Of a DNA stretch of 64,000 nt, positions 2,902-47,674 are shown piece by piece. The DNA is from Anolis carolinensis (taxonomy: Eukaryota): positions 79,646,782 through 79,710,781 of the forward strand of contig NC_085842.1 in assembly GCF_035594765.1 (NCBI RefSeq), written 5' to 3'. Made by a program: the position numbers and the translations under genes. Every line of letters begins with the position of its first letter. Within the stretch, counting starts at the first letter, position 1. The notes beneath the pieces were generated by a model. The model saw nothing but the letters and a program-made list of their open reading frames with translations. It ran no database searches and was not told where the DNA came from.

Positions 2902-5900
2902 CTGGGAGTAAAAAAAAAGAAAGAAAGAAAGAAAATAATAAAAAGAAAGCTGATAGGTAGGATGCTGTGTTTACTGCTGAGTAGCAATGGTTAATTATTG
3001 AGATTATGCCAAAGAATCTTCTACAACCTTGTATTGGTCATTTCCAGAAGTTTGAGGGTTAAACCTACTGTCACCAAGCCTTGAAAGACCAGATATACCC
3101 ACAAATACCTGTAGTTATTATCTAAGAATCTTGGGGACATTTTGCATAATTTTAGACCACACTGGTTTTGAAATCATTTGGCATTTTGAATTCTCCCCTA
3201 TAAACCCTAGGGCAGGTCTGCACAACCTGTTGTCCTCCAGGTGTTTTGGACTTTACCTCCCAAAATTCCTGACCATTGGACAAACTGGCTAGGATTTCTA
3301 GGAGTTGAAGTCCCAAACACTTGGAGGGCAACAGGTTGTGAAGCTCTGCACTAGGGGATACAACTGGTCCTCTTAAACACTAATGGTAGAAATAGGGACA
3401 TATGGACATGCTAACTGCACTTTGCCTGTTCCGATTATCTAACCACAAGCAATTAAAACCAGCTTACAGTAAGATGGCTGACAGTGGTAATTTCACTGTG
3501 TTTTTAGTTTTATGGAGAACTATAGCCAGCAGATATCCTGGATCCATTCTTTAGGGCAGTGGTTTTCAACCTCAGGTCCTCCATGTGTTTTGGACTTCAA
3601 TTCTCAGAAATCCCAGCCAGTTTACCAGCTTTTAGGACTCATGGGAGGACCAAAGATTGAGAACCACTGCTTAAGAGTATTACACATTTAGTTCATCCCA
3701 GAGAAACTGATCGGTAGTAGCACTGCGGTTTCACATATTCTTTAACAGTGCCCTCAAAATGTAAATATGATAAACATAATCCATTTCCATATGAAACTGG
3801 GACACAAACATATCCATACCATTCCTCTATTTCTCCATGTGCCACCACTTCAGGAAGATATACAGTAATATTTGCTGAGGCAGGATACATCTACTTAGTA
3901 TTGGCTCCTGAACCAGACTGATACAAGGCAATTCAAACACATTTTTGTTCATTTTACTGTCTCAAAAAAGATCATTTTTAAAACTAATAAATCATTTGAT
4001 CTCTTTAACAACAAAATCTTCACAAAACAGCCAACTGATAAAAAAACCCAATTTATCCAAAGTCTTCAGAAGAACCAGTCTCCTTACCATATTAGAGCAT
4101 GCACTGGCGAAAGTCATAAATTTGGGGTTGAACTGCAAACAGGTTATAGGGCCTGTGTGTTTCCCATCCAACACAGCAACCTTCATTCCGGTCTCTCCAT
4201 TCCAGACATGGATCTTCCCATCCTCTGATCCTGTAGATCAGATTATGCAAAAAGAGTATAAACCACGGAAGACTTTTCATGAAGAAATCCATTTAAAAAT
4301 GCAGTGGCAGACACACCAATAAAACACAAAATCAACAAGTACCAAGGAAGGGGGGAGGGAGAGGAGAGAGGGAGAGAAGGGGGGGGAGAGAGGAAGAATT
4401 GCACTCTTACCAATCATTATAAATTGTGAATCAGGGGTGAAGGATGCCTCTAGTGTAACAGCTTTACTGTTGTTATATCCCTATAAAATAAAGTTTCATG
4501 AGAAATGTCAAACATACTTAAAGCAAAGGGACAAGGACAGGTTATGAAGTACTACTACTCGAGACTGTGTAGAGGACCTGTGTAGGGGCCCTGCAATTTC
4601 ATCCCCCTACCCCATGTGCCAGAGATTAAAAGTTTCTGAAAAATTACACACAAAAATGAAAGGAAAAGAAGAAAACCACAGAAACAAAGTGAAGAAAATC
4701 TGCAAAATATTTCGACTTTCCTAACAGTAGCTTCAATTCTTAATATATAAAAGCTAGTTTCTTCAACTAACCAAAACATACACTTCGTCCATAATTCAAA
4801 CCTACTAATTCTAATAACCTAAAATTATCATTTTTGTTTTCTATGCAAAATGGCAATCAAGGGTTCCTACTCTTTTTTAAATTTAACCAGCGATTATTCT
4901 CTGATCAAAATGGATAATTTGTTTATTTCAGCAAAACATTAGTTTTAACAGCCAGTCCTCTTTTCATGTTATTACTTTACTATTCCATTTTTGTGTAAAA
5001 AGCAATATTCCTACTTTGCTAGTAGTCACATATCATTATAATAACCTTTAATAAACTTCAGAAAAGCAAGGCAAGCTCACATTTTACATTAACAGAAAGG
5101 TTGTGAAATTCAAAATAGGAAAGCAACTTCTAACACAGTATGAATCTAACACAGTACGCATAACCCGTCTCATCCTTATCATGGGAGATGCTTAAGACAA
5201 AGAGCTTTTCACAAAGTAAAGAAAGAAGTCCTCACTGTAAATGTATGAAGAACAGCTCCTTTAAAGGCATCAACAAGCCGGATGAACCCGCCATTGGTCG
5301 CTATAAGAATAAGTTTACCATCATTGCTGAACTTCAATCCAGTCCATTCGCAGGTTCGGTCATATTGCATTTTGAAAGTAGTAAATGGACCCTTCAAGAA
5401 GAAAAGTAACAGAAACAGTCTAGTCTTTCTGCTTATGAACACTGGCATGAGGCTGAAAAAAATTACAGTTTGAATGTCTAACATTTTCCCAGGAGCCTGT
5501 TTAAGCCATGGAAACAGGATGTACACATGGAGATATTAGTGAACCAACTACTGCCTACAGCCTATTGGGATTTGTGCAAAAAATGCAAGACCAGGAGGGC
5601 CCTACGTGATCCTGTCAGGTGCTTTCATTTTCTTAAGCAAGAGGTGAAGCCCATAATCATTAAACAAAAATCAGCAATGTCTTAAGACATTCTGAGCACA
5701 ATGGTTTTGTGGGACACAGAAATTCTAATTGGGAAAAAGGCATTACATTTTTAAAATTCTGTTTGGGCAATCTATGTAGCTCAAAATTTGCCTAAACATT
5801 ACATACCTTATCAAAAGACCGAAGATCATAAAGTTTCACCATTTCAGAATTCACTCCAGCTGCAAAAATAAGCCCTTCTGGATCAAATGAGCACACAGGC

Positions 5901-8039
5901 TTTCCTTGAGGATGCATCAAACCCTGGAATTTGGAAACATGTTAGAAGAAGTTAGTCCAAAGTTTCTTCTGTGGCATTTTTAAACCACATTTTGATGGAA
6001 CCAATTACTACAAGTGTGATCTTTCCACCTTTGAAGCAGTGCTCTAGCACATCTAATGTGAGTCTCTAGATAGTTTACCTGGCAGTTTGGAGACCGGAGA
6101 TCCCAAAGTCGGATGGTCTTATCAAGTGACCCAGAAATAAACGTATCATCCACAGGAGACATAGACAGAGCAACAACTCTGCAGTGAAGAAATAAAAAAC
6201 AAAATGCCCCAAATAATTGAGCTGTATTTACTGTTTTGTTCTCACAAATTCAAAAGAACATGACATTTTAGGTAAAAAATAAAGATCTGACACTATATAT
6301 TGTAATGTAAGCTTGTCAATCAACACTTTGATTTATTCTTCCTATTTACACCCCAAGATAATAAATGGTATCTCACTCATTTTACCTCTTGCTGTGTCCT
6401 GGAAAGTATCTGATGTACTTATTGTCATGCAGAGAGAGATATCTGATTGTATCTGTAAATAAATATCAACAAAGCAAACATTATGCAGCAACCTTGTATC
6501 ACTTGGTTGTAGTGAGAACTTGCTTACTTGAATAAGACAGATTCTTTCTCTTCATATATTTATAATTGGGGTTACACACTAATATCTCCCAGTAATACTT
6601 TCACTTAGGTAAAGGTTTCCCCTGACATTAAGTCCAGTCGTGACTTTCACTTAACAAATTAATAATTTATCCAACACAAGCCATATTATCTTCATCAAAG
6701 TGTAGACTGGATCTGCCTTAACATGCACACAGAAAAGTTATAAACACTCCATTACCTTTCATTTGAAAAAAATACCAGAAAAAAAAACACTGTCAGCACT
6801 TGTAGATATAAATGCTCAGAGGAATCAAGATTAAACAGTAACTGTGTATCATTGCATTTCTTAACAAGAATATTCAGCAGACCTCTTTGTGTGATACAGA
6901 AGCTAAAAGGCAAATGCTTTGCAAAATTAGCTTTTCACTCTGTTCTGAATGAGAACATGTGATTTTCCAGATGCTACAGTGCAAGCTTCAGGAGCCAAAG
7001 CAGCATAAGTAAGAGACAGTTCACCAGTATCAGGAGGGTTTCAATTCTCTCTAAATCCTTTTTGATGGTATATTTATAAAGGTCATAGTATAAAAAGGCA
7101 AAAGTTGTCCCGTGAATTAAAATGTGCTCTTCTATAATGCAACTAGCTGTGCCCGGCCACGCGTTGCTGTGGCGAAGTCTGGTGGTATGGGAAATAAAGT
7201 ATTGAGGAATTGGTGGTAGTTAAGGTAAAGGGTAAAGGTTTTCCCCTGACATTAAGTCCAGTCGTGTCTGACTCTGGGGGTTGGTGCTCATCTCCATTTC
7301 TAAAGCCGAAGAGCCGGCGTTGTCCGTAGACTCCTCCAAGGTCATGTGGTCAGCATGACTGCATGGAGCGTCGTTACCTTCCCGCCGCAGAGGCACCTAT
7401 TCATCTACTCTCATTAGTATGTTTTCGAACTTCTGGGTTGGGAGAAGGTGGGGCTAATAGTGGGGGCTGTGTTCATCTGCGACCTTTGGGTGCAGAAGTT
7501 CAGCAGCTCAGCGGTTAAACACGCTGCGCCATCAGGGGATATTATTTTCTCAAGGTTGTGAATATACAATATTTCTGATTGTTTTTTGTCTGTTGGAGGG
7601 AAGTATGAATGTTGGAATTAAGGAAAATGATTAGCATGTAATGGGCTTGCAGCTTTAAAGCCTGGCTGTTTCCTCCCTGAGTGAATTTTTTGTTGGGAGG
7701 TGTTAGCTGGCCCTGATTGTTCCCTGTCTGGAATTCCCTTGTTTTGAGAGTGGTGTTGTTTGCGATATTTTATGTGCTTCTATTGTGTGTGGGTCTCAGA
7801 AAAGAGAGGATTTGCCAGACTTTTGATGATGGGAATACTTTGTTGGGAGGTGTTAGCTGGCCCTGATTGTTTCCTGTGTGGAATGGCCCTGTTTTCAGAT
7901 TGTTGTTCTTTATGTAGTGTTTTGATTTTAGAGATTGTATTGTTCTGTTTTATTATAGCAGAGTAATTTTTATATATTGATTTTATTGTTTTTGAATATT
8001 TGGAGCCAGATTGTATTCATTTTTACGGTTCACAGCAAC

Positions 8040-8072
<33 letters not shown>

Positions 8073-8310
8073 GTACTAATAATGAGTCTGGTAATACACA
8101 CTGCTTCACTGCATTGTGAGCTTCCTTTCTGGAAGAATCCTTTCTTGGGAGGTGTTAGCTGGCTGAGTTAGTTTGTTTTGTGGCATTCCCAATTTTCCTG
8201 ATTTCAGAGTGTTATAAAAATAATAAGTTACTATTATTAGTTATTATTATATTGTTGAATGATTATCAATGTTCTAATAATTATTATTCCATTTGTGAAT
8301 GATTATCACT

Positions 8311-8348
<38 letters not shown>

Positions 8349-11300
8349 TTATCATAATAATCAATGATAAGCTGACTTGCAGTATTAAAATTAAAAAGGG
8401 AATGTCGAAACAAACAGATTTTTGGAAAATATGGAGAAAATTTATTGAGTATATTTTTAATGAGGGAAAGGGGTATAAGCCAGCAACAGAGACAATGAAA
8501 TTTTGGACTTGTGAAACAGTATGAGTTGGTTGGTCCTGGTGAAGGTGGCACAAAATAAGGGGAAGGGAAGAGGGGGAAAAGGTATAACAATAATAACGAT
8601 AATAATAATAAAAAATAAAACATGTATAAGTAGATAAAAAGGTGTAGTAGAGATAGTAATAAAGTTGTAATGGAAAAGTCTAAAACTGAGAAGAAATATG
8701 CATAAAGATGTTTTGATTCTGATTTTTCTTTATTGTTGGATTGCATACAATGTGATATGTCTGGGATACTGTAAAATGAGGAAAGAATGTATACTTATAT
8801 ATTATTGAATTATAATATAAATTAATAATAATAATATTGAAAATAAAGCATGTATAGATAGATGAAGGGTGTGTAGTGGAGAGATGTATAGTGAAGTTGT
8901 AATGGAAAAGTTAAAAGACCGATGGGAAATATGCTTGGGGATGTCCTTGATTTTTGTTGTTGTTGTTGGATTGTATGCAACGTGATGTGTTTGAGATATT
9001 GTAGAATGAGGAAAATGTGAGCTTATACATTTGGATTGATAAATTAATAAAAAATATACATAAAAAAATAATTTACTCTTATTTTGAATTGTTAATACAT
9101 TGTTGGATGATTATCAGTGTTATAATAATAATTATTATGACAGCCTTGAATGTTTATTATAGTTGTAATAATAATAACTTGTTATGATTAGTTATTATTG
9201 CATTGTTGAATGATTATTACTGTTATAATAACAATAATAAATTACTATTATTATTGGTTACTATTACATTCTTAAATGATGACCAGTTATTATTATATTA
9301 ATAATAATTATTACTGACAGGGAAGGGAAAGGTGAAGGCGATAGGGCTTGAGAGGGAAAAAAGGGGGGCCGCTGAGGCATTGGAGGGGTTGTCATTTGTT
9401 GGTGAGAACAACAACAACCACAATAACAACAGAAAAGGGGGGGGGGCTCAGCCTGGGCCAACTTGGGCCTTCCCTCGAGTTGTTTTGGGCGCCAACTTCC
9501 ACCCTTCCTGGTCTGAGGCTGTTTACTTTTCCCCCGTCAGCCGTTTAACCGGGTGAAGGGGGAAAGGAAGGGGCTTGAGGCCGGGAAGGGCGGGGGTTGG
9601 CGCCCAAAACAACTGGAGGGGAGGTCCAGACCTGCTCGAGAGCCATGCCATCCTCTTTCTCCCTCACCTTGAAGTCCTCAGAGAAGAACCGGGGAAGAAG
9701 TCCTTGAGGCGGGCCAGGGTGCAGACGGCGCTGCGGAGGGCCCGGTAGGAGGAAGGCCGAGGCCGGGAGGAGGAGAGAGGGTGAGGCGGGGGTCCACGGG
9801 GCCTTCCTGGCGCTGAGGGGAGGGGAGAGGGGCGGGAGGAGGGGGCTGCTCGGCGACCCTCCATGGGCCCTGAGGGGGGAGGAGATTGAGGGGGAGAGGG
9901 CAGAGGAATCCACCTTCCTGCCTTCCTTCCTTCAGCCCAGGCCCAGCTCTGAGGTGAGGTGTTTGTGAGGCCTCCTGGGTGAGGATGATGTGTGTGTGTG
10001 CGCGTGCGCGGGAAGGGAGGAGAGGGTGGTGTGCGTGCAGGCGCAGATCGCCTGTTGCGGTTTTTGGGCTTTTGTTGGCCCTGTGATTGTGTTTGGCATC
10101 TAATTGTGCTGTATCTTACTGGAGCCGTGGATGATGGGTTATGTTGCCAAATTTCAAGGTTGGAGGGCCTTTACTTTTGTTGTTTTGTGCGTCGCCCTGA
10201 TGCCATTACTCTTTTATATATATAGATTATGCCCAAACTGGAGGGCTCCAGGTATGCTAGACAAAAACTCCCGCTATCTCGAGGTAGCACAACGAAGATG
10301 AGAGCTGAACCCATCTAGAGACTGCCAAATTGAGGAAATGAAGGGCTAGAGAGGTCAAAGAAACATCCTCTTATTCAAGTGGCTAATCAAGAAAGGCCAG
10401 ATTTGGACCAAATGTTTATAGACATTGCAGGTTTTTAATTTTATGAAAATAATCTGCAAGCTTCCCCAATGCAACCAAAAATTATTATTCAGTATGGTCA
10501 AACAGAGGGCTGTAGGCACAATCTGTTAAAGAGGCAACTTTCCACTAAACAAATCATAATAGACAGTTCAGTTCCAAAATCAGTTATATAAGACACAAAC
10601 AAGTCTCAGAAGAACTGCTGATTTCTTTAAGTAGCAAAAGTTAGTGATCACCAAACAAATGAAGATAGGAAGCTTCATTCAGTAGGTAAAGCTCTGCCCC
10701 AGGCAAGGCAGTGGCCTGTACAGTTATCTCCTGTACCGGGTGGTATCATAGACCCTCAAACTGTACAAACTACTACCTCAACCCGGAATCAGGCAATATG
10801 TGGGAGGACGACGTAGGCTTGAAAGTTGTAGAATCCTTCATCAAAGAAGACCTCAGTGAAGCTGGATTAAACAGTAACTAAGAAACCCTAAAATATAAAT
10901 TCATACACACCAGTCATGGCAAGTGTTCTGCAGGAAAAAGGAATAATGATTCATCTGTCTCCATTTCTTTCACAGATAACATGTTTACAATGTACATCCA
11001 TTTTTACTCTAGATGTTATACTACACTGTATCATGTATTTCTCCAGAGAATATAACAATTTGTTATTTATATGACAATTTTCAAAACAAGTATCTGACAT
11101 TTTTCATAAACATTTAACTTACTATGGCAAGGTTACTACAGGTTGAATACACCTTATCTAAAAATCTTGGGATGAGAAGTGCTTTTTTGAATTTTGAATA
11201 TCTTGTTTACGTATATGATTGACATATTCACAGGTTTCACATGTGTGGTTTTGATCATTCACAAGCTTGTACTGCTGCCCCTCCCCTCCCGAAGTTGGAG

Positions 11301-14300
11301 TTGCCATGTGAACATTCATATGCCATACCTCGTCTTAGGAGGTGACCAGGAGGCTGTCCAGAAGGCGGGCACAGAACAGGCAGTGATCATTCAACCTCAC
11401 CCATCCCCATCTTGGGGACAGAACTGCCCTGTGAATGTTCACAGAGCAGTCACATCCCGGGGGGGGGGGGGGGGGGGGCGCGCGGGAAGAGGAAAAAGAG
11501 CCAGATCCGCAGTGCCTGTTCCTCCTCCTCTTTCTGTATGCCATATATTTGCTTCCCTCAATACTTCCCTTCTTTTAACGGGGAGAAACTCACACTCACA
11601 GCATGTAGAAAAGCGAGGTGGCACTGGCCTTGCATGGCACCTCATTTACCTTGCAGATCCAGTTTCTCTTCCTGTGGACCACTAAATTACAGTGTTCCCT
11701 CGCTACTTTGCAGACTCACTGTATAAAATGATAGTAGCTACTCTGTGCTCTTACACTGGGGGGGGGGGGGGGTACAATGGTCCTCTTCATCATCACATTC
11801 ACTTTCAAAGAGGTCCAGTGTAAGAAATTGTATATTATATATGGAATTCATTTAGAATGATCCATATAAGGTCAAAAAGGACATAATCAGAGTTGCAGGT
11901 CAGGTTCCCAAGAAACCCCCATTTCCAAGCACAAAGAACCCTGCAGAGAATAATATTATCAAAGAACCTTGAACATTTGTGAAAATCACATCAAGACATT
12001 ATTATACACACCCAGAAAAGCAATAAAAATATGCCTATTGACTCTGGATGACTAACCAGTTCTACTGAATGCAGAGCAGGCCTGCTCTAAAGCAGTGCTT
12101 CTTAAACTATAGGTCCTGACCCCAAATGGAGTTTATATATCTATACACCCGGGGTCACACCTTCATACAATACCCTCAGGCTTCAGGATGGTTGGGTGAG
12201 CAGGAAAAATTGCTGCTGTTTCATCTTGAACCCTACCAAGGACCAAAGCTGTCACACAATACAAATACTCCATCTCAGGTCTGAGGCTATTGTGTGAATG
12301 TGCATGCACAAGATGCGCTTCATCGGCTGTGGAGAAGGGGGCTGACACACTTCCCTCTACTGAGCAACAAAGCAGAGGAACTACTTAGGGGGGATGACGC
12401 GGAAAGCTGTCCCTTCCTTTTCCAGCCAAAGAAGCAAGGGAATCTCAACTAATTTCCCCTCCAAGGGGCAAAGTTGGAGCTGGGGAATAGCAAATGCTTC
12501 ATTTTCATATATTTACATGAAGTCTTTGGATGTATCTCCCACAAATCTGTTTAAAATTATTTAATATGTTGAGATAGGGAAGCTAAGATTGCTATAGTAA
12601 AACAGGTTTCTTTGGGGGCTTCCTTAAATATGCATATTCAAAAGTTGCAATTAACAAACTGTTCCATCAAAGCTTCAGTTCGATCTGCTGTAGCTAGAAG
12701 AAATTGAGAACAATAAAGAGACCACTTACCATCAATTTTATTGGAACTGTACACCACAGTGTTGGCAGCATGAGTGTATCTGATGAGATCCACTCCATAC
12801 TTTTTACTGTATAATGTTCTTTTTGGTCTGCCAAGAAAAATTACAAGAACATTTATTCGTATTTTACACAAAATGTACTCAGTCATATCAAAATCTTTTT
12901 AAAAGCTATCAAACCTATACATTCCATCTTAAAGAAGCCAATCTTCTTTATAAAACTTTTTTTTTTCATTTCTTCCTATGAGAATTACAGACAATCTACT
13001 GACTAACAAATGACATTTAAATCCGAGTTTACAATATTAAATAAAAAAGAAGCAGAGAGATTAGAAAAAAATATTCAAATGAATAATAAAAATATATATT
13101 TGGATCTTCTCAAAAAGTACACAGAACTTTGGTAATGTTTAAAGTAGTTGAGGTAAACACCAAGAATACCCAAGAGATGACAAGATACACCACAACAGCA
13201 TTAGGAACAGCCACTGCTGATATTGTTGCTATATAAGTAAATTGTTAATTCTAGTCTCACTTCAGTCAAATGTAGCCAAGACGATACTTGTAAAAGTCTC
13301 AAGTCTCTTCTTCAATTCCAATTAGTACAGAACATATAAGTAGGCGCTGACAATATGTTCTGAAGAAAGGCTATCACTGCAATAACTTTGCACATTTTAG
13401 CTTCATTGAATTCATAATTTTACTTTCATGATTGCCAACAGATAGGTAATTTGTTACAAGTGGTAGAGTACACTGATTGCAACATATTTTCAATTGTTAT
13501 TCTATGGATGCTTTCCTGCAACAGAGAACAACCCTAGAATGCCTGCAGTACCTTAACTTGGGGAAGAAGGAAAGGGAATAATAATAACAACAATAACAAT
13601 TTATTTATATCCTGCCACCATCTCCCATAGGGACTCAGGGAAGCTTACAAAATAGCACACAAAGATGCTATACATAAAACACATAATGCATACAATAAAA
13701 TACATCAACATGAAAACAATAATAACATTACATAAACCAGGTACAGTAGAATCTCACTTATCCAAGATAAATGGGTCGGCAGAACATTGGATAAGCGAAA
13801 ATCTTGGATAATAAGGAGGGATTAAGAAAAAAGCCTATTAAACATAAAATTACATTATAATTTTACAAATTTAGCACCAAAACATCATGTTTTACAAAAA
13901 ATTGATAGAAAAAGCAGTTCAATACACAGTAATGTTATGTAGTTACTGTATTTACGAATTTAGCACCAAAACATTGCAACATTTACTACAAAAACAATGA
14001 CTACTAAAAGGCAGACTGCCTTGGATAAGTGAAGCTTAGATAAATGAGACTCTACTGTATATAAACTGGATAAAACAACCTCCATTAAAATAGAATCAGT
14101 TAAAAGACCCATGTAATCAATATAGTAGTCTAGTTGAAAAAGCTCAAGAACTACTTTTGTCTGGCCCCAAGTGCAATACAACACAGTAAACCTCTCTTCC
14201 CCCACTTAATATGTGAAAACGTTTAGAGGGATAGCCAGAAGAAGCCATAAAAATGTATGGTACAGGAGATCTATATGCAAACCTCATGCTCCCCGAGATG

Positions 14301-17300: not shown

Positions 17301-20300
17301 ATGGTAATAACTGAATATATTGTGTATACATATAATATTGATACTAATATTATAATGTAATACAATATAATAATACTAATAATAATTATACAATATAATA
17401 ATATTAATTATACATTATATATTAAATGTAATATTACTAATATTATGGTAGTGATATAGGACAATATAGTAATATATAATGCTAATATTGGGCTATGCCA
17501 ATAATATAATATATTGTATGTACATACAACTTGTAAGCCGCTCTGAGTCCCCTTTGGGGTGAGAGAGGGTGGGGTATAAATGTAGTAAATATATAAATAA
17601 ATAGTTGTTGTTGGGGGGGTTGGCACTACAAATAAGACATGTGCAGTGTGCATAGGAATTTGTTCGTATTTTTTTTCCAAATGATAATTCAGCCCCTCAA
17701 CAGCCTGAGGGACCGTGAACCGGCCCTCCACTTAAAAAGTTTGAGGACCCCTGTATTACATTATTCGTATAGCACAATATAAGCATTATATATTGCTATA
17801 TTGTACTATAACACTATATTGTAATATTATTAGTAATATTACATGTAATATAAATATACCATTATAATAGTGTATTATTATTATATATTGTATTACATTA
17901 TAACATTATTAATATAATATGCATGTACAATTTATTATATTATAAGTATAGCATAATATGATTATTAAAAGGTAAAGGTTTCCCCTGATGTTAAGTCCAG
18001 TCATGTCTGACTCTGGGGGTTGGTGCTCATCTCCATTTCTAAGCTGAAGAGCCGGCGTTGTCCGTAGACACCTCCAAGGTCATGTGGCCTGCATGACACA
18101 GGAGACATGGTGGAATGATGTTTTCCTGCCCCTTCTTCATTCTGGCTCAGAATGGCAATTATTCCTTTTTTTTTGGGGGGGGGGGGGGGCGGCTCCCATC
18201 TGATGACATAGGAGACATGGTGGAATGATGTCTTCCTGCCCCCTTCTTCATTCTGGCTCAGAATGGCAGTTATGAATTTATGGATCTAACACCTACACAG
18301 TTCAGAAATGGAGTGTAACACCTGCCAAAAACATCCACGATTTCTATGTTTAAAAACAAAAAGTAAACATTACTCAAAAAACACTTTATTATAATACCTT
18401 TAATATTAGACTAATAATTTTGATAGGGTTTTGTAAAGGTGCCACACAACTCCCACTTTTCTACCACATAACAGGAGCACAACTACTACTGTAGAAAGTT
18501 TAAAAGATAAAATTGGCAAAAGCAAGATTAGATTGCCTTTCTATAAAATGAGATATGTCTGTTCTCATTCTAAGATTTCTCTCCAAGCATTCTATAGAGA
18601 TATGGAGGGTACAATTAGTGTGCCAGGGTTGCTCCCAATCTCTGGCCCTGATGCCATCACATGTGTCTGTGTTGTCATATGTCCTCATTTTGTTTTTGAC
18701 CTACAGCAAACCTATCACAGGGTTTATCTGGAAAATCTGTCCAGAGGGGATTTCTCTTTGTCATTCTCTGAGAGCCCTTCTACACTGGCCACAGAATGCA
18801 CGTTGAAGCTAGCAAGGCCACAGTGGCCACAAAAAGTTTATCATCAATTTGCACTGCAACACATATCTAAAGGTATACAATACCTTAAAAGTTTGAGGTA
18901 AGTCAGAGTTCAGCCCCTGTGCATCCCAGATCCAAGGTAAAATCACCTCTGCATTGTAGACACCAGCCTCTGCTGAAGTGAAGGATCTGGAACAGAGGCT
19001 GCAGAAAATGCCCTAAGGGCATGGCTGGGCATCAAGGGGGCAGCCGGCCTCCTGAAAGGGGTAATGGATGACCTGCTGTCATTTCCCTCCTTTTTCACCC
19101 ATAAGCCTCCGGTGTGCTGATGCACATCTCGGCAAAAAATAGAAAAAACTGTGAAACAATTCGAAGTCAGATTCTGTGTTTAATTTAATCACCTTCCTGG
19201 CCTCAAACTGGTTCCTAGCATGGTGGTCTGATCACCCAATGAAAGTGGTGTCTCCCAAACCTGTTCCAAACTGGTTATTACTGGTTAGTTATTATATGTT
19301 GATATTGTTTTGTTTTATTTATTGTGATTGATTTGTTTGTTTTTATGGCATTTTGTCGGAGCCGCGGTGGTGCAATGGGTTGAACTCTTGTGCCGGCTGA
19401 CCAGAAGATTGGAAGGTCGGTGATTCGAATCCACGAGACGGGGTGAGTTCTCATCTGTCAGTCACAGTTTCCCATGCAGGGACATGAGAGAGGCCTCCCA
19501 CAGGATGGTAACACATCTGGGAGTCTCTTGGGCAACGTCTCGGTAGACGTCCAATTCTCTCACAGCAGAAGCAATTTGCTTGCTTCTGACATGATATAAA
19601 ATGGCATCTAATGTTTGCACTTTTGATGGAAACCACCCTGAGTCCCCTTGGGGAGATAAGGTGGGTTACAAATAAAGTCTTATTATTTCATTATTGGACT
19701 GTAATCTGCATTTTAACTGTGTGTATCCTGTTATGTGTGTTTTAATGGTAGTCTGTGTGCATTCAGAAGATCTACAAGACACGCTAAACACCTTTGCAGA
19801 AGCATGCAAGAATATTGAGAAAACCAAAGTGCTCTTCCAGCAGTTGTCAGCCAATCCTTCTGCAATGTCAGGAATACAGCTTAATGGTGTAGCATTAGAA
19901 AATGTTGACCATTTCTGTCACCTCTCTACAAAAGTCAACACTGACGCTGAAATAAAACATCGCCTGAGCTCTGCAAGTGCAGCATTTCCCCAAATGAAGC
20001 AGAGTTTTGAGGATCGGGACATCCGTAGGGATACCAAGGTGCTTATTTACAAAACTATAGTCCTCCCAATTCTGCTACAACGCCTGCAAAACATGGACTG
20101 TCTACAGACATCACACTCAACTTCTCGAATGATTCCATCAGTGCTGCCTTCAAAAAATCCTGCAAATCTCTTGGGAACACAGCTGGACAAATGTAAGTGA
20201 GCTGGAAGACCACTAGAGATGCTCCTAGACCGTCAACTCCGCTGGGCATTTGGACAACTCCACATTGTCCGAATGCCCGATCACGGTCTCCCAAAGCAGT

Positions 20301-29301: not shown

Positions 29302-31879
29302 CAATGATATCATTGCTGTACTGCGATTACAAAATATTTGCCACTATATTGGCAAATAGAATTAAGCAAGCTCTAGCACAGATCATTCATAAAGATCAGG
29401 TGGGGTTTATCCCAGGAAGACAAGTAAATCAAAACATCAGACTAATATTGAACACCCTGGAAGTAGCAGGAAAAGACCCAAATAGAGATTTGGCATTGTT
29501 CTTTATTGATGCAGAAAAAGCCTTTGACCATGTCAGATGGGATTATTTGGAAAAAGTGCTAGAAAAATTTGAAGTTGGCCACCAATTCAAAAGGGCAGTA
29601 GGGGCTATATACACTAATCAAAGAGCAAGGTTAAACATCAATGGTCAACTGTCAGATGACATTGACATACAAAAAGGGACCAGACAAGGCTGCTGGTTGT
29701 CCCCACTATTACTTATTATGGGTCTGGAAATCTTAAATGTCAGAATAAGTGAAGAGAAGGAAATTACTGGTTTAAAGATCAGTGGCCAAGAACTAAAAAT
29801 TAGGGCTTACGCAGACGATATAGTCTGTATCCTAACTAACCCACTACAAAGTATTAAAAAGTATTGGACATTATTCAAAGATATGGTGACACATCAGGAT
29901 TCATTATAAACAAGAAAAAATCTAAGTTTTTAGTAAAAAAAATACAGATGCTAAAAGCTCTAAGAAACTGGAGGCCGCAGTAGACTGTGAGGTGATTCCG
30001 AAAGTAAAATATCTAGATATATGGGTCACAAACAAAAATATCAATTTATTCCAGGATAATTATGTTAAAACATGGGAAGACATTAAAAAAGATCTTACTA
30101 GATGGCAAACAATCCCACTAACATAGATGGGCAGAATTGCAGTAATAAAGATGATGGTACTCCCCAAAATGCTATTCCTGTTTCAAAATATACCCATTAT
30201 TAAAGGAATATTTTTTTTTGAGAAATGGAAAAGAGAGATTACAAATTTTATTTGGGCAGGAAAAAGTGCAAAGATAGCATACCGAAATTTAATTGACGAT
30301 AAAGAAAGAGGGGAGCTAAGCTTACCCAATCTAAGGACCTATTATGAGGCTGCAGCGCTGTCCTGGATGAAGGAATGGATAAAATTAGAAAATAAGACCC
30401 TGTTAGATTTGGAAGGATATGAATTAAGATTTGGCTGGCACACATATGTGTGGTATAATGGAGACAAATTAAATAAATACTTTAATAAACATATAATTAG
30501 AGGGGGATTATTAGACATTTGGAAAAAATACAGGAAAGGTTTTGAACCAAAAACTCCCCTTTGGCTGAGGCCACTAGAAGCAGTTACAAGACCAGACTTA
30601 AGCGTAGAAACAAGAACATGTAAAGAATACCTTATTAGAGAAAATGAAGAGTGGAAATTAAAAGGGCAGGAAGAATTAGAGATTAATGATTGGTTTTCAT
30701 ATCACCAATTGCATGAAAGATATAAAAAAGATATGAGGGTAGGTTTTGCAACTAAAAAATCAGAACTGGAAAGAATATGGGAAAAGGGAAACAAAGGGTT
30801 AATCTCCAGATTATACAAATACATATTAAGTTACAATATGGAGGACAACACAGTCAAGACAGTAATGATATCCTGGGCCAAGGACCTAGGTAGGCCAATA
30901 GATTTGGATAGCTGGGAGTACCCATGGAACAAAGAATTCAAATTCACAATATCTGGATCAATTAGGGAGAATCAATATAAAATGTTTTATAGATGTTACA
31001 TCACCCCAGCAACATTGTAGGAAACAGAAAGGGACTTTCATCCATATGTGGTGGACATGTTCAACCGTAAGGCATTTTGGAACAAGGTAATTAAAGAGAC
31101 AAATAAAATGCTACATAATAAGATTTTTAAAAGCCCAGGATTGTGTCTAATAGGTTTACATAGAGAAAACAATAACCAGAAGGACCAAGAAATATACCAA
31201 TATAGCTTTGCCGCAGCAAGATTGACCATAGCCAAAGACTGGAAAGGAGAAAAAGGTTTTAACTAAAAAGGATTGGAGGGAAAGAATGCAGTAATATATG
31301 CTAATGGCCAAACTTACCAATAATAGGAGGAACAAAAGTAATGAGGACTTTTTAGAAACATGGAAGTTGGCCATAGCATATCTGAATAGAGAGTCAGTAA
31401 TATAGAAGAGTTCCATTAGGAATTTAGGGTTACTATTAACAAGGATAGATAAATTGGCTTAAAGGCTTCATAGTGCTTCAGGGTTGGAAGTCATGGTGAA
31501 CGGTGCACGGGTGGGGAAGGGGTTTTATTTTGTGTGGGATAGGGGTTTAGGTGCGTGCAGGGTCTGTTGTGTGTAACACGTTTGTATGTCTTTGTTTGAA
31601 TGTTAGGGTGAATTCTTATATTTATTTTTTTAAAAATGAGTAGAAATCTAGATTGAAAATAGTGGATAACATGTAGAAAGAGCAATTCTAAATGTTTTGA
31701 ATTACAGATAATAATATGTACTTAACGTTAGAATTAACTGGGTGATTGACTAATGTAGATATGCATGTGCATTTCTAAAGGATTGTTATTTGACTTTATC
31801 TGCTATAATTTTCTGTTTTGTTATGTAACATATCATTAATAAATTGTTTACCCACCAAAAAAAGAAAAAAAGAAAAAAA
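29302..31879 (+). mobile_element. 5'-truncated L1 LINE (ORF2 RT + C-terminus, disrupted) with polyA tail
   Basis: DYKIFATILANR, IDAEKAFD, GTRQGCWLSP, YADD; AATAAA at 31838, A-rich tail; 16-bp TSD AGAAACGGAAGTTTTG / AGAAACAGAAGTTTTG. Confidence 0.93.
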
Positions 31880-32534
31880 AGAAACAGAAGTTTTGGAACT
31901 TGCTGCACCTATGGACAGAGGTAGGTCATAGTAAGAAACCTGATGGAATAGAATCTGCGCAAGAACAATTCAGTCCTTTGTTGACATCTTTCTCCTATGC
32001 TTACACAATCCAGCCATTTTATCCCCAATTATGTTTTTCCTTTCAACCTTCTAGCAAATCACAGGGGCTGCTTATTTTGAAATCTTGGCCTGAGAGAAAA
32101 CTGGAATTTGGGGATACTTGGTGTCTCACAATCCAAAATTGGGATAATGTTCGTCTGCTTTTAAATGACTTAGGGTGTGGAGCAGTTTGACATACAGCGT
32201 GTTTCTGAAAATTATTTTGCATAACCTGAGATTTCTCATTTTGTCTAGCTCCTTAGTTGAAGGCAGGTGATTTCCAAGGCAGCTTCAGTCTGTAGATCAT
32301 TAACATCCTAATTTGATTCATCTGATCAGCTGGACAAGAAGACCTTTGGACTTTTCTAGGAGATCAGTGAGCATTGTTGGAGGCAGGTGAGAAAACTGGG
32401 TTTTCAGTAAAGCAAGCACAGTGGGATTGAAGAAAACCCGTATATCTCTCCATTTTACTCATTTATCCTGGCATTTAGTTCACAATACTTATTTTGCCCA
32501 CCCTTTGTCACAGGCTGCATGCAAAGACTGGCTA

Positions 32535-32923
32535 ATGACTCAGGCTGTGGTTTCACGCTTCAGGAATTTGCCTTTAGCTGGCACAGTCTGCTTGCGGTCC
32601 GCTTCTCACCCTACCAGTGGGACATCTCTCAATATGACGCTCAGGGAACATGGGCTGCATTTCTTCCGCAGTGCTATTGGAACTGTCCTCCCAGGACCCA
32701 TGTTGAAACGAGTGCTGGTGCTAGACACAAAAAGTGGTTGTCCCAGATTACTGGTGCGCGATCAGTCTTTTGAACTGAGGAGGAACCTGTATTTGGTTGG
32801 CTTTGGGAAGGCTGTACTGGGCATGGCAGCTGCAGCAGAGGACATCCTTGGGGACCACCTTGTTCGGGGAGTGATTAGTGTTCCACATGGCATCCAAGAA
32901 ACTATGCAGCACCGAGGAATGAG
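32535..32923 (+). CDS. GLYCTK: GLYCTK first coding exon (acceptor at 32513/32514)
   Basis: MTQAVVSRF...[25 protein letters not shown]...; AG|GTAAGG donor. Confidence 0.93.
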
Positions 32924-35900
32924 GTAAGGAAGCAATGGACCTTCTTACAGACAAAAATAGGCCCAGAGGTATTCTCCGGTGCCCCCCCCCATGAATCTCT
33001 TTTTCAATTTGATGTAGCCAAATTCTCATTTTCATCTTGTGTTGTGGAAGCCAGGCTTTTCCATTCAAAAGTGTCTGCACCACTGTTTTTAGTGATAATT
33101 GTGTAAGCAGTTGGAAGTAGTAAATGCAAATTACTAATTTTAAGTCTTTTGGAGATAAGTCCTTTTTTCATAATTTAGGTCAAGAATTATTCTAAGGGCA
33201 CATTTCTTATACAATCTACTGTGGAGTAACCTAACAACCTGCAAGCTTGTTTCAGTCTTTTTCTGGTTTAATAGGTAAGAGGTTCTGGACAGTTTGCAAT
33301 CTTGCTACATAGGGGTTCACAGAGTACAGAGGTCTGCCAGGGAACAGTGAGCTTTGATGGATCCAAAATAGCAGCATGATTTGGCTGAAGTGCTTAGAAA
33401 CCATGTCATCCTGCAGACAGAATGATTATGGGTTGTTTTATTTTAATTATGAGCACATGTCCTAAGTCTTGTGTGAATGATTTTGGCCTTGTCCAACAGG
33501 AAATGGGCCATGCTGTCATTCATAAGTGATACGATATTCATGTGGTCCCTCATTGTGTCTGATCACCCCCAGTAATTGGATCATATTTCTTCTCATTAAG
33601 CAGTTAGAAGGGATCCAAATTACAAGTTGTTGTCCTGCGAATCTTCATATGTAGATGCATTTGGTGGTAGGGTCAGCATAGTTGAGAAAGTAACTTGTTC
33701 TTTTTTTATTGTGTAGAGAGATGTTGCTGAAGCCCCAGAGCCACATTCTAGTTATGGAAGGAGCTAAGCACAATCTTCCTGACAGAGATGCTTTGAAGGC
33801 AGCGAGTGCCATCCGGGATTTGGCCGAGAGCCTAACCACAGAGGACCTTCTCCTGGTGCTGATCTCAGGTGATTACATGATGGAAAAACTCACTTTCCCC
33901 AAATAATCTGCTTTCTTTCATGCACATTGTCCCAGTCTTCTGTTCTCTTTTCTGGTCTTAGTTATTCTTTGCTTCCATATAGAAGAAGCCACTGCTTTAA
34001 AATGCCTCATAACACAAGCTCAGTCAGTTTGTTGGCTGCAAAGATAGCAGAACGGACGTGTGAAGAGGTTCAGAATATTTTTCATTTTTAAGGCAGCTTC
34101 ACAAGATATTGAATCATAGAATAATAGAATTGGAAGAGACCACATGGGCCATCTAGTCCAACTCTCTGTTATGCACCATAAAAGTATCCCATCCAGCCTC
34201 TGTCTGAATACCTTCAAAAAAGGTGTTTCCACCATATGTACATATGCTAATGGTTTTGCTGCTTGTTTTATATGTCTCTATAGCCCTGTATGTCTCCTGT
34301 TGTCTGCCTATGGAGACCTGCCCTTGCAAACCCTTAGTAAATTGTGATATCTGCTGGAATGAGAGGAACAATAATGTGGAATACGAATATCTTTGTATCC
34401 AATTGTTGAATAAACTTGGTGAAAGAAGCATTACCATATTAGGAAGTCATTTTCTCTGAGTCAGACTTTCCTCCCTCCTACTTTGCTTTTTCTCGTAGTC
34501 ACTAGTCTTAGATCTGTGAATCTTACTTTGTAATCAAGCTAAATATCTATTATTCTGCTGCAGTGTTTGTAGTTTCACAAAGCACTCTGCTTGCTTTTGT
34601 TTCTCTGACCACTTGCGAGACTTTTGAAACAGCAAGGCATGCTTTCTCCAGAGGATGGCAGTCCTGAATCAGAAAACAGAAATGTCATGCTATTCCAAAT
34701 GCTCGGGAAGGTGTAGGATATGGAATTGTGAAGAGCATAATTTTAGAAATTTTTCTGCAGTTTGCTCTGAATAGGTGGAAGGGAATTGAAATGGGTGTTC
34801 ACTATAGTTTTGTTTGTGGCATATGAATAATGAAATTCTTTGGTCAAGTAACATTGAAGCAGAATGCCTGTGGCTTTTTAAAAATTTCATATATTTTCAT
34901 ATGCCCATAATGTCACTGGTGCCATAGGCAGACCAGAGCTGTATTGCCTCAAAATACTTGAAACAAATCTGGTATATGGTATAAAAATGAGTAGGAAAGA
35001 GTTTTGACAGGGACAAAGGAAAGTAGAGCAAGAGGCCATGTACTTCGGACTGCATTTCGGCCTAATTGGCACATGGCTATGACACATGGTACCACTGAGT
35101 CATATATTTTAAATATTGATGTCTGTCACAGTGTATGGGGACCTTTCATGCATTTAAAAAAAATGCTAGATGCTTTCACACGTTCTCTTCCCATTCCATT
35201 TTTGTTATTTTTATAACTGTTCACAGTGAAACACACTTTCTGTGCCATAAACTTTTTCAGCTCAGTCGCAAAAAGAAGTTGGAGATCTGGGAGCCAACTG
35301 CCAACAACTAAGACTATCTGTTTTATTTTGTTTTGTTTTTTGTTGTTGTTGTTTTTGGATGTATGGAGGCTCAACCAGAGCAATTCAATCAAAACCTGGA
35401 CAGGGAGCACAGAAAAAGTGATAGCTGGAGAAGTACATGGATCTATATCATGGGTAGAATGTTTGTGTGTGTGCACCTGTACCTCAGTGTTGCTATAGTT
35501 AACTTGAAGACAGATTATTGCTGTATATTATAATTATTAGATTTGTTGCTGTCATAATCTTTGTTTATACCCAAAACTAGGACTCAAGGCCTCCTACAAA
35601 TTACAATGAATACTGTACAGTTTTAAAATGAAATTCAAAACACCACAACACTAAAACTGAATTTAACCATTAACAACACCAATAATAATTTAAAACATAT
35701 AACTTAGGTGTTAAAAAAGCAGTCTAAAAACAAATTAGCACATTTTAAAAGCTCTATTTTTTAAAAAACCTGTATTTCCCAAAATTATGGTTGATATAAA
35801 TTGTTCTCTTAAGTCAACTTCAAGGAGTCCAAATACTCTTCCTAAAGAAGGGAGCTTTCTGCCACTTTATCCAGGTTCTTTCTTGAGGCCCTTGGCTACT

Positions 35901-46289: not shown

Positions 46290-47523
46290 GTGGCTTTCTA
46301 TTCTATGATATCCTTTGGGAATGCGGCTTTCCATACTATGATATCCTTTGGGAATGCGTGGCAGGGGGGAGGATTGGAGGCTCTGTGGAGATTCCAGTCA
46401 TACCTCTCAGGCAGGATTCAGATGGTAGGGCTTGGGGATAGCTGTTCCTCAAAAAGGAGTTGTCATATGACATCCCACAAGGTGCCATTCTATCCCCAAT
46501 GCTTTTTAACATTAACATGAAACCACTGGGAGAGATCATCTGGAGGCATGGAGCAGGTCCTATCAGTATGCTGATGACACCCCAATATATTTCACCATGA
46601 CTTCCAAAACAGCTCTTGCTAAGGATAGCGTGTCTCCTCTGAATTATTGCCTGAAGGAGGTAATGGACTGGATAAGAAAAAACAAATTGAAACTGCATCC
46701 AGACAAAAGAGAGGTGCTTGCACTAAGGGTCCTAATCTGGGGATGGGGGTGTGTCAGCCAGTTCTGGACAGGATTACACTTCCTTTAAAAGACTGTTCAC
46801 AGCTTGGGAATGCTCCTGGATCCATCTCGCTAAATGTCAGCCAGGTAGATGCAATTGTCAGGAGTACTTATTATCAGCTTTGGCTGATATGACAGTTTCC
46901 TAGATTTGGAGGACCTGAAGATGGTAGTGCACACACTGGTAACCTCAAGACTGGACTTCTGCAAACGCTTTACATTGGGCTACCTTTGTACCAAGTTCAG
47001 AAACTTGTTGATTCAAAATATGGCAGCCAGACTGGCTACAGGAACATCTAGGAATGAGCATATTACATTTATCCTAAAGTCACTCCACTGACTGCTAGCT
47101 AGTTTCCAAGCAAAGTACAAAGTGTTGGTTTAGACCTTTAAACCAGACATGGTTTGGTTACTACAGGTTACTACAGGATCACCTTCTCCCTTACAATCCA
47201 TCCCTCACACTTAGATCCTCTGTGGTGGACTACTCCAGCTCACCAGAACCTGACTGGTGACTATCACCCAGAGGATCTTTTCATCAGCTGCCCCAAGACT
47301 GGAATAACCTGCCAGGACAGACACAATTACGACACAATTGAAGAACCATCTCTTCTAGCAGACCGATCCAGATTTTTTAATAATAAATTTTAGACTTGTG
47401 TCTCGTGTCCACTACATTTTAATCATTGTTCTGTGTATTTTAATATATGTATTGTAGAAATAGTTTTAATGTGCATTTATATAATGATAATTTGTTTTTA
47501 GCTATGTTGTAACCTGCCTTGAG
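46290..47523 (+). mobile_element. Degraded L2-clade LINE 3' portion downstream of the GLYCTK stop
   Basis: QYADDT-like motif near 46565, LVTSRLDFC, IQNMAARL; tail runs into the assembly gap. Confidence 0.8.
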
Positions 47524-47674
47524 NNNNNNNNNNNNNNNNNNNNNNNNNNNNNNNNNNNNNNNNNNNNNNNNNNNNNNNNNNNNNNNNNNNNNNNNNNNNN
47601 NNNNNNNNNNNNNNNNNNNNNNNNNNNNNNNNNNNNNNNNNNNNNNNNNNNNNNNNNNNNNNNNNNNNNNNNNN
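47524..47674. other. Assembly gap (run of N)
   Basis: 151 N characters. Confidence 1.

What the first reader, a model, noticed from the sequence alone, without database searches (positions are those of the whole stretch)
7143..10226. Helitron in WDR82 intron 2 has captured the first coding exon of the kinase TESK1
Seen: canonical Helitron ends (A|TC at 10226; GCCAC..GTGGC hairpin, CTAG|T at 7143). They enclose a CpG-rich block whose minus-strand translation from ATG 9864 reads ...[24 protein letters not shown] and, after a frameshift, FFSEDFK|GTGAG. Recalled knowledge: TESK1 reads [37 protein letters not shown], while TESK2 has ALISAF, so TESK1 fits better. About five codons (the C-x-EKIG region at the start of the glycine loop) are missing. 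The splice donor and following intron-like sequence are retained, which implies DNA-level capture rather than retroposition. Helitron gene capture is well known in maize and bats; I do not know of a described TESK1 capture in a reptile.
Basis: partly seen in the sequence, partly recalled or inferred. Interest (0 to 1): 0.88.

Follow-up and report, generated by a model that had tools for sequence, protein, structure and literature searches.

The report
Helitron carrying a TESK1 exon fragment
A 3.1-kb rolling-circle transposon (Helitron) in an intron of a lizard WD40 gene carries a decayed DNA copy of the first coding exon and the start of intron 1 of the kinase gene TESK1; this is a known kind of event that I did not find reported for this gene or for anole lizards.

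Summary
On the minus strand, 10226-7143 begins A|TC and ends with an 18-nt hairpin, a 9-nt spacer and CTAG|T. It has no inverted terminal repeats and no long ORF.

**Cargo.** The 66-aa ORF from ATG 9864 found only three proteins among 1.84 billion, all TESK-family N-termini. It shares residues seen only in Anolis sagrei TESK1. At DNA level, 9897-9451 aligns in order with the A. sagrei TESK1 locus (394 positions, 82.5% identity). The alignment covers exon 1, the identical AAG|GTGAGGGA donor and about 200-260 nt of intron 1, so this is a DNA-level capture of TESK1. It is not a retrocopy. A 16-nt deletion shifts the frame, and three positions invariant in eight aligned TESK1 proteins are replaced: a dead pseudo-exon.

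**Helitron 3' end.** It recurs in A. sagrei and in five metagenome contigs. Similarity stops at CTAG each time.

**Not shown:**
- the exact 5' end;
- an empty site;
- a second copy with the same cargo (only an unchecked scan note, s1-517391, reports one on other DNA of this genome);

Verdict: a new member of a known kind, of modest interest.

The parts
7143..10226 (-). Whole non-autonomous Helitron-like element, 3084 nt, in the same direction as the host gene
   Evidence: A|TC start and hairpin-CTAG|T end. No terminal inverted repeats. No ORF longer than 146 aa and none resembling a transposase. The C>G strand skew is confined to about 7125-10250.
9986..10226 (-). 5' terminal region beginning TC; origin unknown
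   Evidence: A|TC at 10227|10226. No similar sequence in the window, L001 or L002-L008. The 5' boundary is inferred, not confirmed.
9899..9985 (-). Possible TESK1 5' flank or 5'UTR (weak)
   Evidence: Aligns in order with L001 4884-4979, just upstream of the annotated ATG. Only 2 of 300 shuffles reach the score. Not significant under stricter scoring.
9668..9897 (-). TESK1 exon-1-derived pseudo-exon: ATG at 9864-9862, 16-nt deletion between 9694 and 9693, last exon base 9668
   Evidence: phmmer hits are only TESK N-termini. Protein alignment with A. sagrei TESK1. DNA alignment to L001 5025-5276, z=32.
9407..9667 (-). TESK1 intron-1-derived sequence starting with the GT donor (9667-9666); contains a palindromic repeat (arms 9628-9558 and 9534-9464)
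   Evidence: In order with L001 5277-5585. The donor context matches over 15 nt. The same palindromic repeat sits at the same distance from the donor. A 26/26 identical block lies at 9476-9451, and a further block at 9441-9407. z=16. Inverted repeat I10.
7576..9406 (-). AT-rich, G-poor internal region of tandem and dispersed repeats and (ATT)n microsatellites
   Evidence: Repeat families D2 and D5. TRF arrays at 8040-8083, 8241-8321, 8312-8370 and 9155-9310. Skew.
7218..7575 (-). SINE fragment in the same direction as the element
   Evidence: Matches window 17966-18097 at 92.5% and L001 18470-19039 at 76-82%.
7143..7217 (-). Helitron 3' terminus: hairpin 7173-7156, spacer, CTAG 7146-7143
   Evidence: 82.7% identical to L001 27199-27125. 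82-88% identical to five metagenome contigs. Similarity ends at CTAG in all, and the next base is T in 5 of 5 contigs.
12731..12829 (-). Host gene exon upstream of the insertion (WDR82 exon 2 by recalled motifs)
   Evidence: Translation [18 protein letters not shown].... No database confirmation.
6385..6453 (-). Host gene exon downstream of the insertion (WDR82 exon 3 by recalled motifs)
   Evidence: Translation [23 protein letters not shown]. No database confirmation.

Best explanation
The stretch 7143-10226 (minus strand) is a non-autonomous Helitron. It has no transposase of its own, so a RepHel protein encoded elsewhere must have moved it. It sits between an A and a T in intron 2 of the host WD40 gene (WDR82 by recall), in the gene's direction.

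About 330 nt from its 5' end it carries roughly 490-580 nt copied as DNA from the 5' end of an anole TESK1 gene:
- perhaps about 90 nt of 5' flank;
- the first coding exon from just upstream of the MEG start codon;
- the exon-intron junction;
- about 260 nt of intron 1, including a small palindromic repeat that lives in that intron.

The copy is not under selection. It has a 16-nt frameshifting deletion in the glycine-loop codons, three replacements at invariant TESK1 positions, and partial CpG loss.

**Shown:** the ends, the TESK1 origin, the retained intron, the decay, and the recurrence of the 3' end.

**Inferred:** the exact 5' boundary, that the cargo was mobilised with the element, and that the insertion is neutral for the host gene.
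For: **Ends and structure.** Ends read directly. No terminal inverted repeats. No long ORF.

**3' end.** The last 55-75 nt recur in A. sagrei (L001 27125-27199, 82.7%) and in five metagenome contigs. Similarity stops at CTAG, and T follows in 5 of 5 contigs.

**Strand composition.** C>G on the element strand, 0.2-0.7, changes to about 0 near 7125 and 10250.

**Cargo, protein level.** phmmer against 1.84 billion proteins gives 3 hits, all TESK N-termini. BLASTP to a sturgeon TESK gives E=7e-13. SSSRPRP and DFF are shared only with A. sagrei TESK1 among eight TESK1 proteins.

**Cargo, DNA level.** Window 9897-9451 aligns with L001 5025-5481 over 394 positions at 82.5%. z=32 for the exon part and z=16 for the intron part. 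The exon 1 end in A. sagrei is confirmed at ...SEVFK|GTGAGG. A 26/26 block lies after the palindrome; it occurs in L001 only in TESK1 intron 1 (a second copy with 2 mismatches lies 286 nt downstream), not beside the other copies of the palindromic repeat. A further block in order lies at 9441-9407.

**Population.** 16 runs of the same organism, from 5 studies, hold at least 64% of the sampled words of 6500-12700.
Against: - No second copy of the 5' end was found in any available DNA. TCTATATATATA could partly be a host TA repeat, so the 5' boundary may be off by some bases.
- No empty site was seen, and the flanks are unique in the available data.
- The A. sagrei copy of the 3' end is followed by C, not T.
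- The hairpin is not thermodynamically exceptional.
- Identity to A. sagrei TESK1 is only about 75-82%. The window species' own TESK1 was not available, so the cargo boundaries are approximate.
- No copy showing the same cargo between the same ends was examined. Only an unchecked scan note (s1-517391) says one exists.
Confidence: 0.8

Rival explanations
1. The TESK1 fragment is not cargo that travels with the Helitron. It arrived separately, either by a local duplication or filler-DNA repair event or inside another element that nested into an already inserted Helitron. Alternatively, the true element boundaries differ from 7143-10226.
For: Only one copy with this arrangement was seen. The 5' end has no relatives in the available DNA. 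The 240 nt between the 5' end and the cargo are of unknown origin. The element also holds a SINE and repeat units shared with other elements, so nesting does happen here.
Against: The cargo lies wholly between a canonical TC start and a confirmed family 3' end. No target-site duplications or inverted repeats flank 9407-9985. The same C>G strand bias runs across the 5' region, the cargo and the internal part. An unchecked scan note reports a second Helitron with a TESK exon end on another piece of this genome.
Confidence: 0.1
2. The captured fragment is active in its new place. Its pyrimidine-tract-CAG acceptor-like site (AG at 9871-9870) and strong donor (9667-9666) make a 202-nt frameshifting cassette exon in host transcripts, or its 5' flank acts as an alternative promoter. 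The insertion would then modulate WDR82 output or produce chimeric RNAs.
For: The element is in the host gene's direction. The donor context AAG|GTGAGGGA is intact and identical to the parental one. A long pyrimidine run followed by CAG|G precedes the ATG. A possible 5'-flank remnant is present. Bats give a precedent: the NUBPL promoter and first exon amplified by HelibatN3 (PMC2997563). A scan note (s1-517380) proposes a poison exon.
Against: CpG observed/expected has dropped to 0.50, as expected of a methylated, silent copy. The ORF is broken. WDR82 is a highly conserved gene (my knowledge), so substantial poison-exon use would likely be selected against.
Confidence: 0.07
3. The similarity to TESK1 is chance or low-complexity noise, or the source is TESK2 or a processed (retro) copy.
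For: The N-terminal two thirds of the ORF are proline- and serine-rich. E-values against the huge library are marginal, about 5e-4. The best named hit is labelled 'TESK2-like' in sturgeon.
Against: All three hits in 1.84 billion proteins align the same conserved motif. The DNA alignment to the A. sagrei TESK1 locus runs through the donor into intron 1, with z-scores of 32 and 16, which a retrocopy or a TESK2 origin cannot give. All tetrapod proteins in the top 120 of both N-terminal searches are TESK1 by name, apart from unnamed entries and one bird entry labelled TESK2.
Confidence: 0.02

Closest known systems
[quoted passage not shown]
   Same: A non-autonomous animal Helitron carries the 5' end of a single-copy host gene, including the first exon, copied as DNA.
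   Different: In the bat the cargo is amplified to more than 1,000 copies. Here only one copy was examined, promoter capture is at best weakly indicated, and the exon is frameshifted.
Helitron-2N3_AC and the other non-autonomous Helitron families of Anolis carolinensis (Novick et al. 2011, PMC3014272)
   Same: Anole lineage. Non-autonomous, about 2 kb or more, insertion at TA. Helitron-2N3_AC has a composite structure with a SINE fragment, and the element here also holds a SINE fragment.
   Different: That paper reports only captured transposon fragments (Poseidon, SINE) and calls composite structure rare. It describes no host-gene exon. I could not compare with the Repbase consensus sequences, so family membership is untested.
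Horizontally spread animal Helitron families defined by their 3' ends (Thomas, Schaack and Pritham 2010, PMC2997563)
   Same: The last 55-60 nt, including the hairpin and CTAG, are 82-88% identical in five unrelated metagenome contigs and in A. sagrei, while the rest differs. This is the pattern that paper uses to define families.
   Different: The source organisms of the metagenome contigs are unknown. I did not test whether this 3' end is one of the named families.
Gene-fragment capture by maize Helitrons (cited in PMC2997563)
   Same: Exon-plus-intron pieces of host genes sit inside non-autonomous Helitrons, usually as non-functional fragments.
   Different: Maize elements often carry pieces of several genes. 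Here a single gene fragment was identified.

Membership tests
Helitron (non-autonomous) | 5' end TC and 3' end CTRR | tested here: met
   TC at 10226-10225 and CTAG at 7146-7143 on the minus strand.
Helitron (non-autonomous) | Short GC-rich hairpin about 10 nt before the 3' end | tested here: met
   GCCAC..GTGGC at 7173-7156, 9 nt before CTAG. Conserved in seven independent loci. The fold energy alone is not exceptional (z=-0.07).
Helitron (non-autonomous) | Insertion between A and T with no target-site duplication, shown by an empty site | tested here: inconclusive
   The flanks are A| and |T with no duplication.
Helitron (non-autonomous) | No terminal inverted repeats | tested here: met
   No inverted repeat pairs the two ends.
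Helitron (non-autonomous) | 3' end shared with other copies, similarity stopping at the terminus | tested here: met
   L001 27125-27199 and L002-L006. T follows CTAG in 5 of 5 contigs and C follows in L001.
Helitron (non-autonomous) | 5' end shared with other copies | tested here: not met
   No match to 10100-10226 in the window, L001 or L002-L008. Very little lizard DNA was available, so this is weak negative evidence.
Helitron (autonomous) | Rep/helicase ORF | tested here: not met
   The longest ORF is 146 aa of low-complexity sequence, hence non-autonomous.
Helitron gene capture | Cargo homologous to a host gene at DNA level, including non-coding parts | tested here: met
   Aligns in order with A. 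sagrei TESK1 exon 1, donor and intron 1.
Helitron gene capture | The same cargo between the same ends in further copies (mobilised together) | not testable with these tools
   No access to the rest of this genome. Only the unchecked scan note s1-517391 bears on it.
TESK1 (source gene, not TESK2) | Best protein and locus match is TESK1 | tested here: met
   Closest protein is A. sagrei TESK1, with lineage-specific residues shared. The locus alignment includes TESK1 intron 1. No lizard TESK2 sequence was compared directly.
WDR82 (host gene) | Exon translations match WDR82 | tested here: inconclusive
   Eleven recalled WDR82 motifs were found in order on the minus strand. The neighbouring glycerate kinase gene was confirmed. 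PDB has no match and the Atlas says only WD40.

The most novel reading that the evidence does not exclude
This Helitron family has spread the TESK1 5' fragment (possible core promoter, start codon, acceptor-like site and strong donor) to several loci in anole genomes. Where it lies in a gene's direction, as here in WDR82 intron 2, it would be spliced in as a frameshifting cassette exon or would start chimeric transcripts. That would be a reptilian counterpart of the NUBPL-Helibat case.
Probability: 0.12. Interest if true: 0.55.

Novelty: new member of a known kind. Interest (0 to 1): 0.35.

Why it matters
Capture and spread of host exons and promoters by Helitrons is well documented in maize and in vesper bats, and far less so in other vertebrates.

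The detailed survey of anole DNA transposons (PMC3014272) reported only captured transposon fragments. My literature searches found no paper combining Helitron with TESK1. A clear exon-plus-intron capture in an anole therefore adds a reptile example.

If the family is multi-copy, it also offers a natural experiment. The same splice-competent cassette would be dropped into many genes, so its exonisation and the birth of chimeric transcripts could be followed.

For genome annotation it explains a spurious TESK1-like exon inside WDR82.

Tried and rejected
1. **Reads evidence.** So there is no copy count, no empty allele, no related-species empty site and no RNA evidence. I sent no letters of 10699-10783 to any search tool afterwards; later scripts masked them or stopped at 10690, and one script only counted bases in bins there.
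2. **Other copies by exact protein look-up.** Two cargo ORFs gave nothing on record.
3. **Species' own TESK1.** Only A. sagrei TESK1 carries the anole N-terminus in the collection.
4. **Orthologous WDR82 intron from another anole.** No full-length WDR82 protein id could be reached under the length rule. The GLYCTK route gave only Sceloporus and Phrynosoma, which are too distant.
5. **Internal empty site.** The joined flanks matched nothing.
6. **PDB searches.** Nothing useful for the cargo ORF or the host exons.
7. **Other scans of the element.** No Rfam family and no tRNA.
8. **Viral contigs.** The 3' end was absent.
9. **G-to-C hypermutation of the cargo.** The pairwise counts looked asymmetric (G>C 18 against C>G 4). 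Outgroups (Phrynocephalus, Eublepharis) show that 3 of the 4 such sites in the conserved block changed on the A. sagrei side. I do not claim it.
10. **Promoter capture.** Sequence upstream of 9898 is not significantly similar under strict scoring and only weakly similar under lenient scoring.
Full report
**What is in the sequence.**
Read on the minus strand, the host sequence ...GGGCATAA is followed at 10226 by TCTATATATATAAAAG.... At the other end the element closes with GCCAC-AGCAACGC-GTGGC (7173-7156), nine bases, and CTAG (7146-7143), followed by T. Both terminal strings are unique in the 64-kb window, with none expected by chance. No inverted repeat links the two ends. The longest ORF inside is 146 aa of low-complexity sequence. 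The hairpin folds as a 7-bp stem with one bulge, but is no more stable than shuffled sequence. Its value lies in its conservation, described below.

**The host gene.**
Eleven short WDR82 motifs that I recalled occur in order on the minus strand. The exon encoding [12 protein letters not shown]...NKID lies at 12829-12731 and the exon encoding [23 protein letters not shown] at 6453-6385. The element therefore lies in intron 2, in the gene's direction. The name WDR82 remains recall-based. PDB has no match and the Atlas search says only 'WD40'. The neighbouring gene on the plus strand (45184-46080) is glycerate kinase. Its best matches are Sceloporus and Phrynosoma at 83-84%, which places the genome among pleurodont iguanians. 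I searched exons one by one and did not join them into a spliced model.

**The cargo at protein level.**
The ORF 9864-9667 gives 66 aa ending ...[27 protein letters not shown]. The next frame gives RFFSEDFK immediately before GTGAGG.
- phmmer against 1.84 billion representative proteins returned three hits and no others. All align the same motif: two short exon-1 read-through predictions (one from cod genome records, one from Logan contigs of unknown organism) and a 706-aa sturgeon kinase named TESK2-like. It has Pkinase domains, and BLASTP gives E=7e-13.
- Word-based searches with that protein's N-terminus, and with the A. sagrei N-terminus, returned TESK1 proteins of birds, turtles and squamates, among them A. 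sagrei TESK1, P0013.
- In the alignment the cargo shares SSSRPRP and DFF with the A. sagrei protein only. Other squamates have GGGRLRP and DFY.
- The cargo replaces three positions that are invariant from sturgeon to lizards (S to C, D to K, V to D) and lacks the CEKIGAG stretch.

**The cargo at DNA level.**
The A. sagrei TESK1 locus was fetched as L001, with the gene at 5001-48053. Its exon 1 is 5001-5276 and ends ...SEVFK|GTGAGG.
- BLASTN aligns window 9820-9660 with L001 5107-5284.
- A local alignment extends this to window 9897-9451 against L001 5025-5481: 394 aligned positions at 82.5% identity, all in order.
- It covers the MEG start codon, the whole remaining exon, 15 identical bases across the exon-intron junction, and about 200 nt of intron 1.
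- A palindromic repeat lies at the same distance from the donor in both sequences, followed by a 26/26 identical block.
- That block occurs in L001 only in TESK1 intron 1 (a second copy with 2 mismatches lies 286 nt downstream), not next to the other copies of the palindromic repeat.
- A further block in order, 9441-9407 against L001 5551-5585, follows.
- Against dinucleotide shuffles the exon part scores z=32 and the intron part z=16.
- The frameshift is a 16-nt deletion (L001 5235-5250) between window 9694 and 9693.
- Upstream of 9898 there is no significant similarity under strict scoring. There is a weak match in order, 9985-9899 against L001 4884-4979, under lenient scoring: 2 of 300 shuffles reach it.
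- CpG observed/expected is 0.50 in the cargo and 0.71 in the parental region.

The retained donor and intron exclude a retrocopy. The locus match settles TESK1 rather than TESK2.

**The Helitron reading.**
The last 75 nt of the element are 82.7% identical to L001 27199-27125, where similarity ends at CTAG. A degenerate pattern of the hairpin-to-CTAG stretch found five metagenome contigs. In each, 55-60 nt are 82-88% identical to the window, similarity stops at CTAG, the next base is T, and the rest of the contig is unrelated. This is the behaviour of a Helitron family 3' end as defined by Thomas et al. (PMC2997563).

The 5' end has no relatives in the little lizard DNA I could reach. It rests on two things:
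- A|TC at the start;
- strand composition. The element strand has C well in excess of G (0.2-0.7) from about 7125 to about 10250, while both flanks are near zero.

Internally the element holds the unknown 5' region, the TESK1 fragment, about 1.8 kb of AT-rich tandem and dispersed repeats, a SINE fragment and the 3' end.

**What could not be done.**
I did not send those places to any search tool afterwards.
- This removed the planned tests for copy number, for an empty allele or a related-species empty site, and for RNA junctions.
- The run index shows that 20 runs of one organism in 8 studies hold the stretch. Of these, 16 (from 5 studies) hold at least 64% of its sampled words. That fits a common or fixed insertion but does not prove it.
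- Exact-protein look-ups for further copies found nothing, and the flanks match nothing else.
- A first-stage note (s1-517391) reports another Helitron with a TESK exon end on another piece of this genome. So the scan has seen this before on other DNA, but I could not check it.

**A side test.**
Other notes of the scan propose strand-specific G-to-C hypermutation in Helitron cargo. Here the pairwise counts against A. sagrei look asymmetric: G>C 18 against C>G 4. With Phrynocephalus and Eublepharis as outgroups, 3 of the 4 such sites in the conserved block changed on the A. sagrei side. The cargo-side changes there show no such bias: six substitutions in about 84 nt, plus the deletion. The strong C>G composition of the whole element remains unexplained.

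**Mechanism and comparison.**
The most likely history has four steps:
1. A non-autonomous Helitron acquired the 5' end of TESK1 as DNA in an anole ancestor.
2. A RepHel protein encoded elsewhere mobilised it.
3. It inserted at an AT in WDR82 intron 2.
4. It has since decayed neutrally.

The closest precedent is HelibatN3 with the NUBPL promoter and first exon (PMC2997563). In anoles, Novick et al. (PMC3014272) described composite Helitron-2N3_AC with transposon fragments only. No paper in the library combines Helitron and TESK1, and my searches on Helitron, Anolis and gene capture or first exon found no report of this capture.

Because the element lies in the host gene's direction and keeps an intact donor and a pyrimidine-tract-CAG site (AG at 9871-9870), a 202-nt frameshifting cassette exon or chimeric transcripts are possible. 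No evidence for them exists here.

**Verdict.**
It is a new member of a known kind, of modest interest.

Noticed in passing
window 7125-10250, minus strand: The element's own strand is strongly G-poor and C-rich, with (C-G)/(C+G) up to 0.7, even in its AT-rich repeats. Both flanks are near zero. The SINE part (7250-7500) is much less skewed. The cause is unknown. The outgroup test on the TESK1 block did not support G-to-C hypermutation.
   Followed up: partly
L006:1008-1143 (metagenome contig WNFK01081615.1): Two Helitron 3' ends (hairpin plus CTAG) lie in tandem about 70 nt apart, followed by a (TA)n run. L005 is also inserted next to (TA)n. The source organisms of these contigs are unknown.
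   Followed up: no
L001:5339-5481 and 5742-5767 (A. sagrei TESK1 intron 1): The palindromic repeat and the 26-nt block that follows it appear twice, about 286 nt apart, in A. sagrei intron 1. This is a local duplication that the captured copy does not show.
   Followed up: no
L001:5001-5057: The A. sagrei annotation starts TESK1 19 codons upstream of the MEG start. The captured copy lacks 38 nt there and has no upstream ATG, so the true start codon of anole TESK1 may be the MEG one.
   Followed up: no
window 7625-7911 and 8135-8213; L001:2620-2750: A repeat unit of about 80-130 nt occurs three times inside the Helitron and once, inverted, 2.3 kb upstream of A. sagrei TESK1. A scan note (s1-519744) says a similar unit is shared by a Helitron and a hAT element.
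   Followed up: no
window 45184-46080 (+) and 32421-32927 (+): Glycerate kinase (GLYCTK) exons lie head-to-head with the WD40 gene. LINE-like reverse-transcriptase ORFs lie at 29304-31020 and 40639-42992.
   Followed up: partly
window 47440-47790: A run of N (151 in the window) falls inside this stretch. It was left as it is.
   Followed up: no
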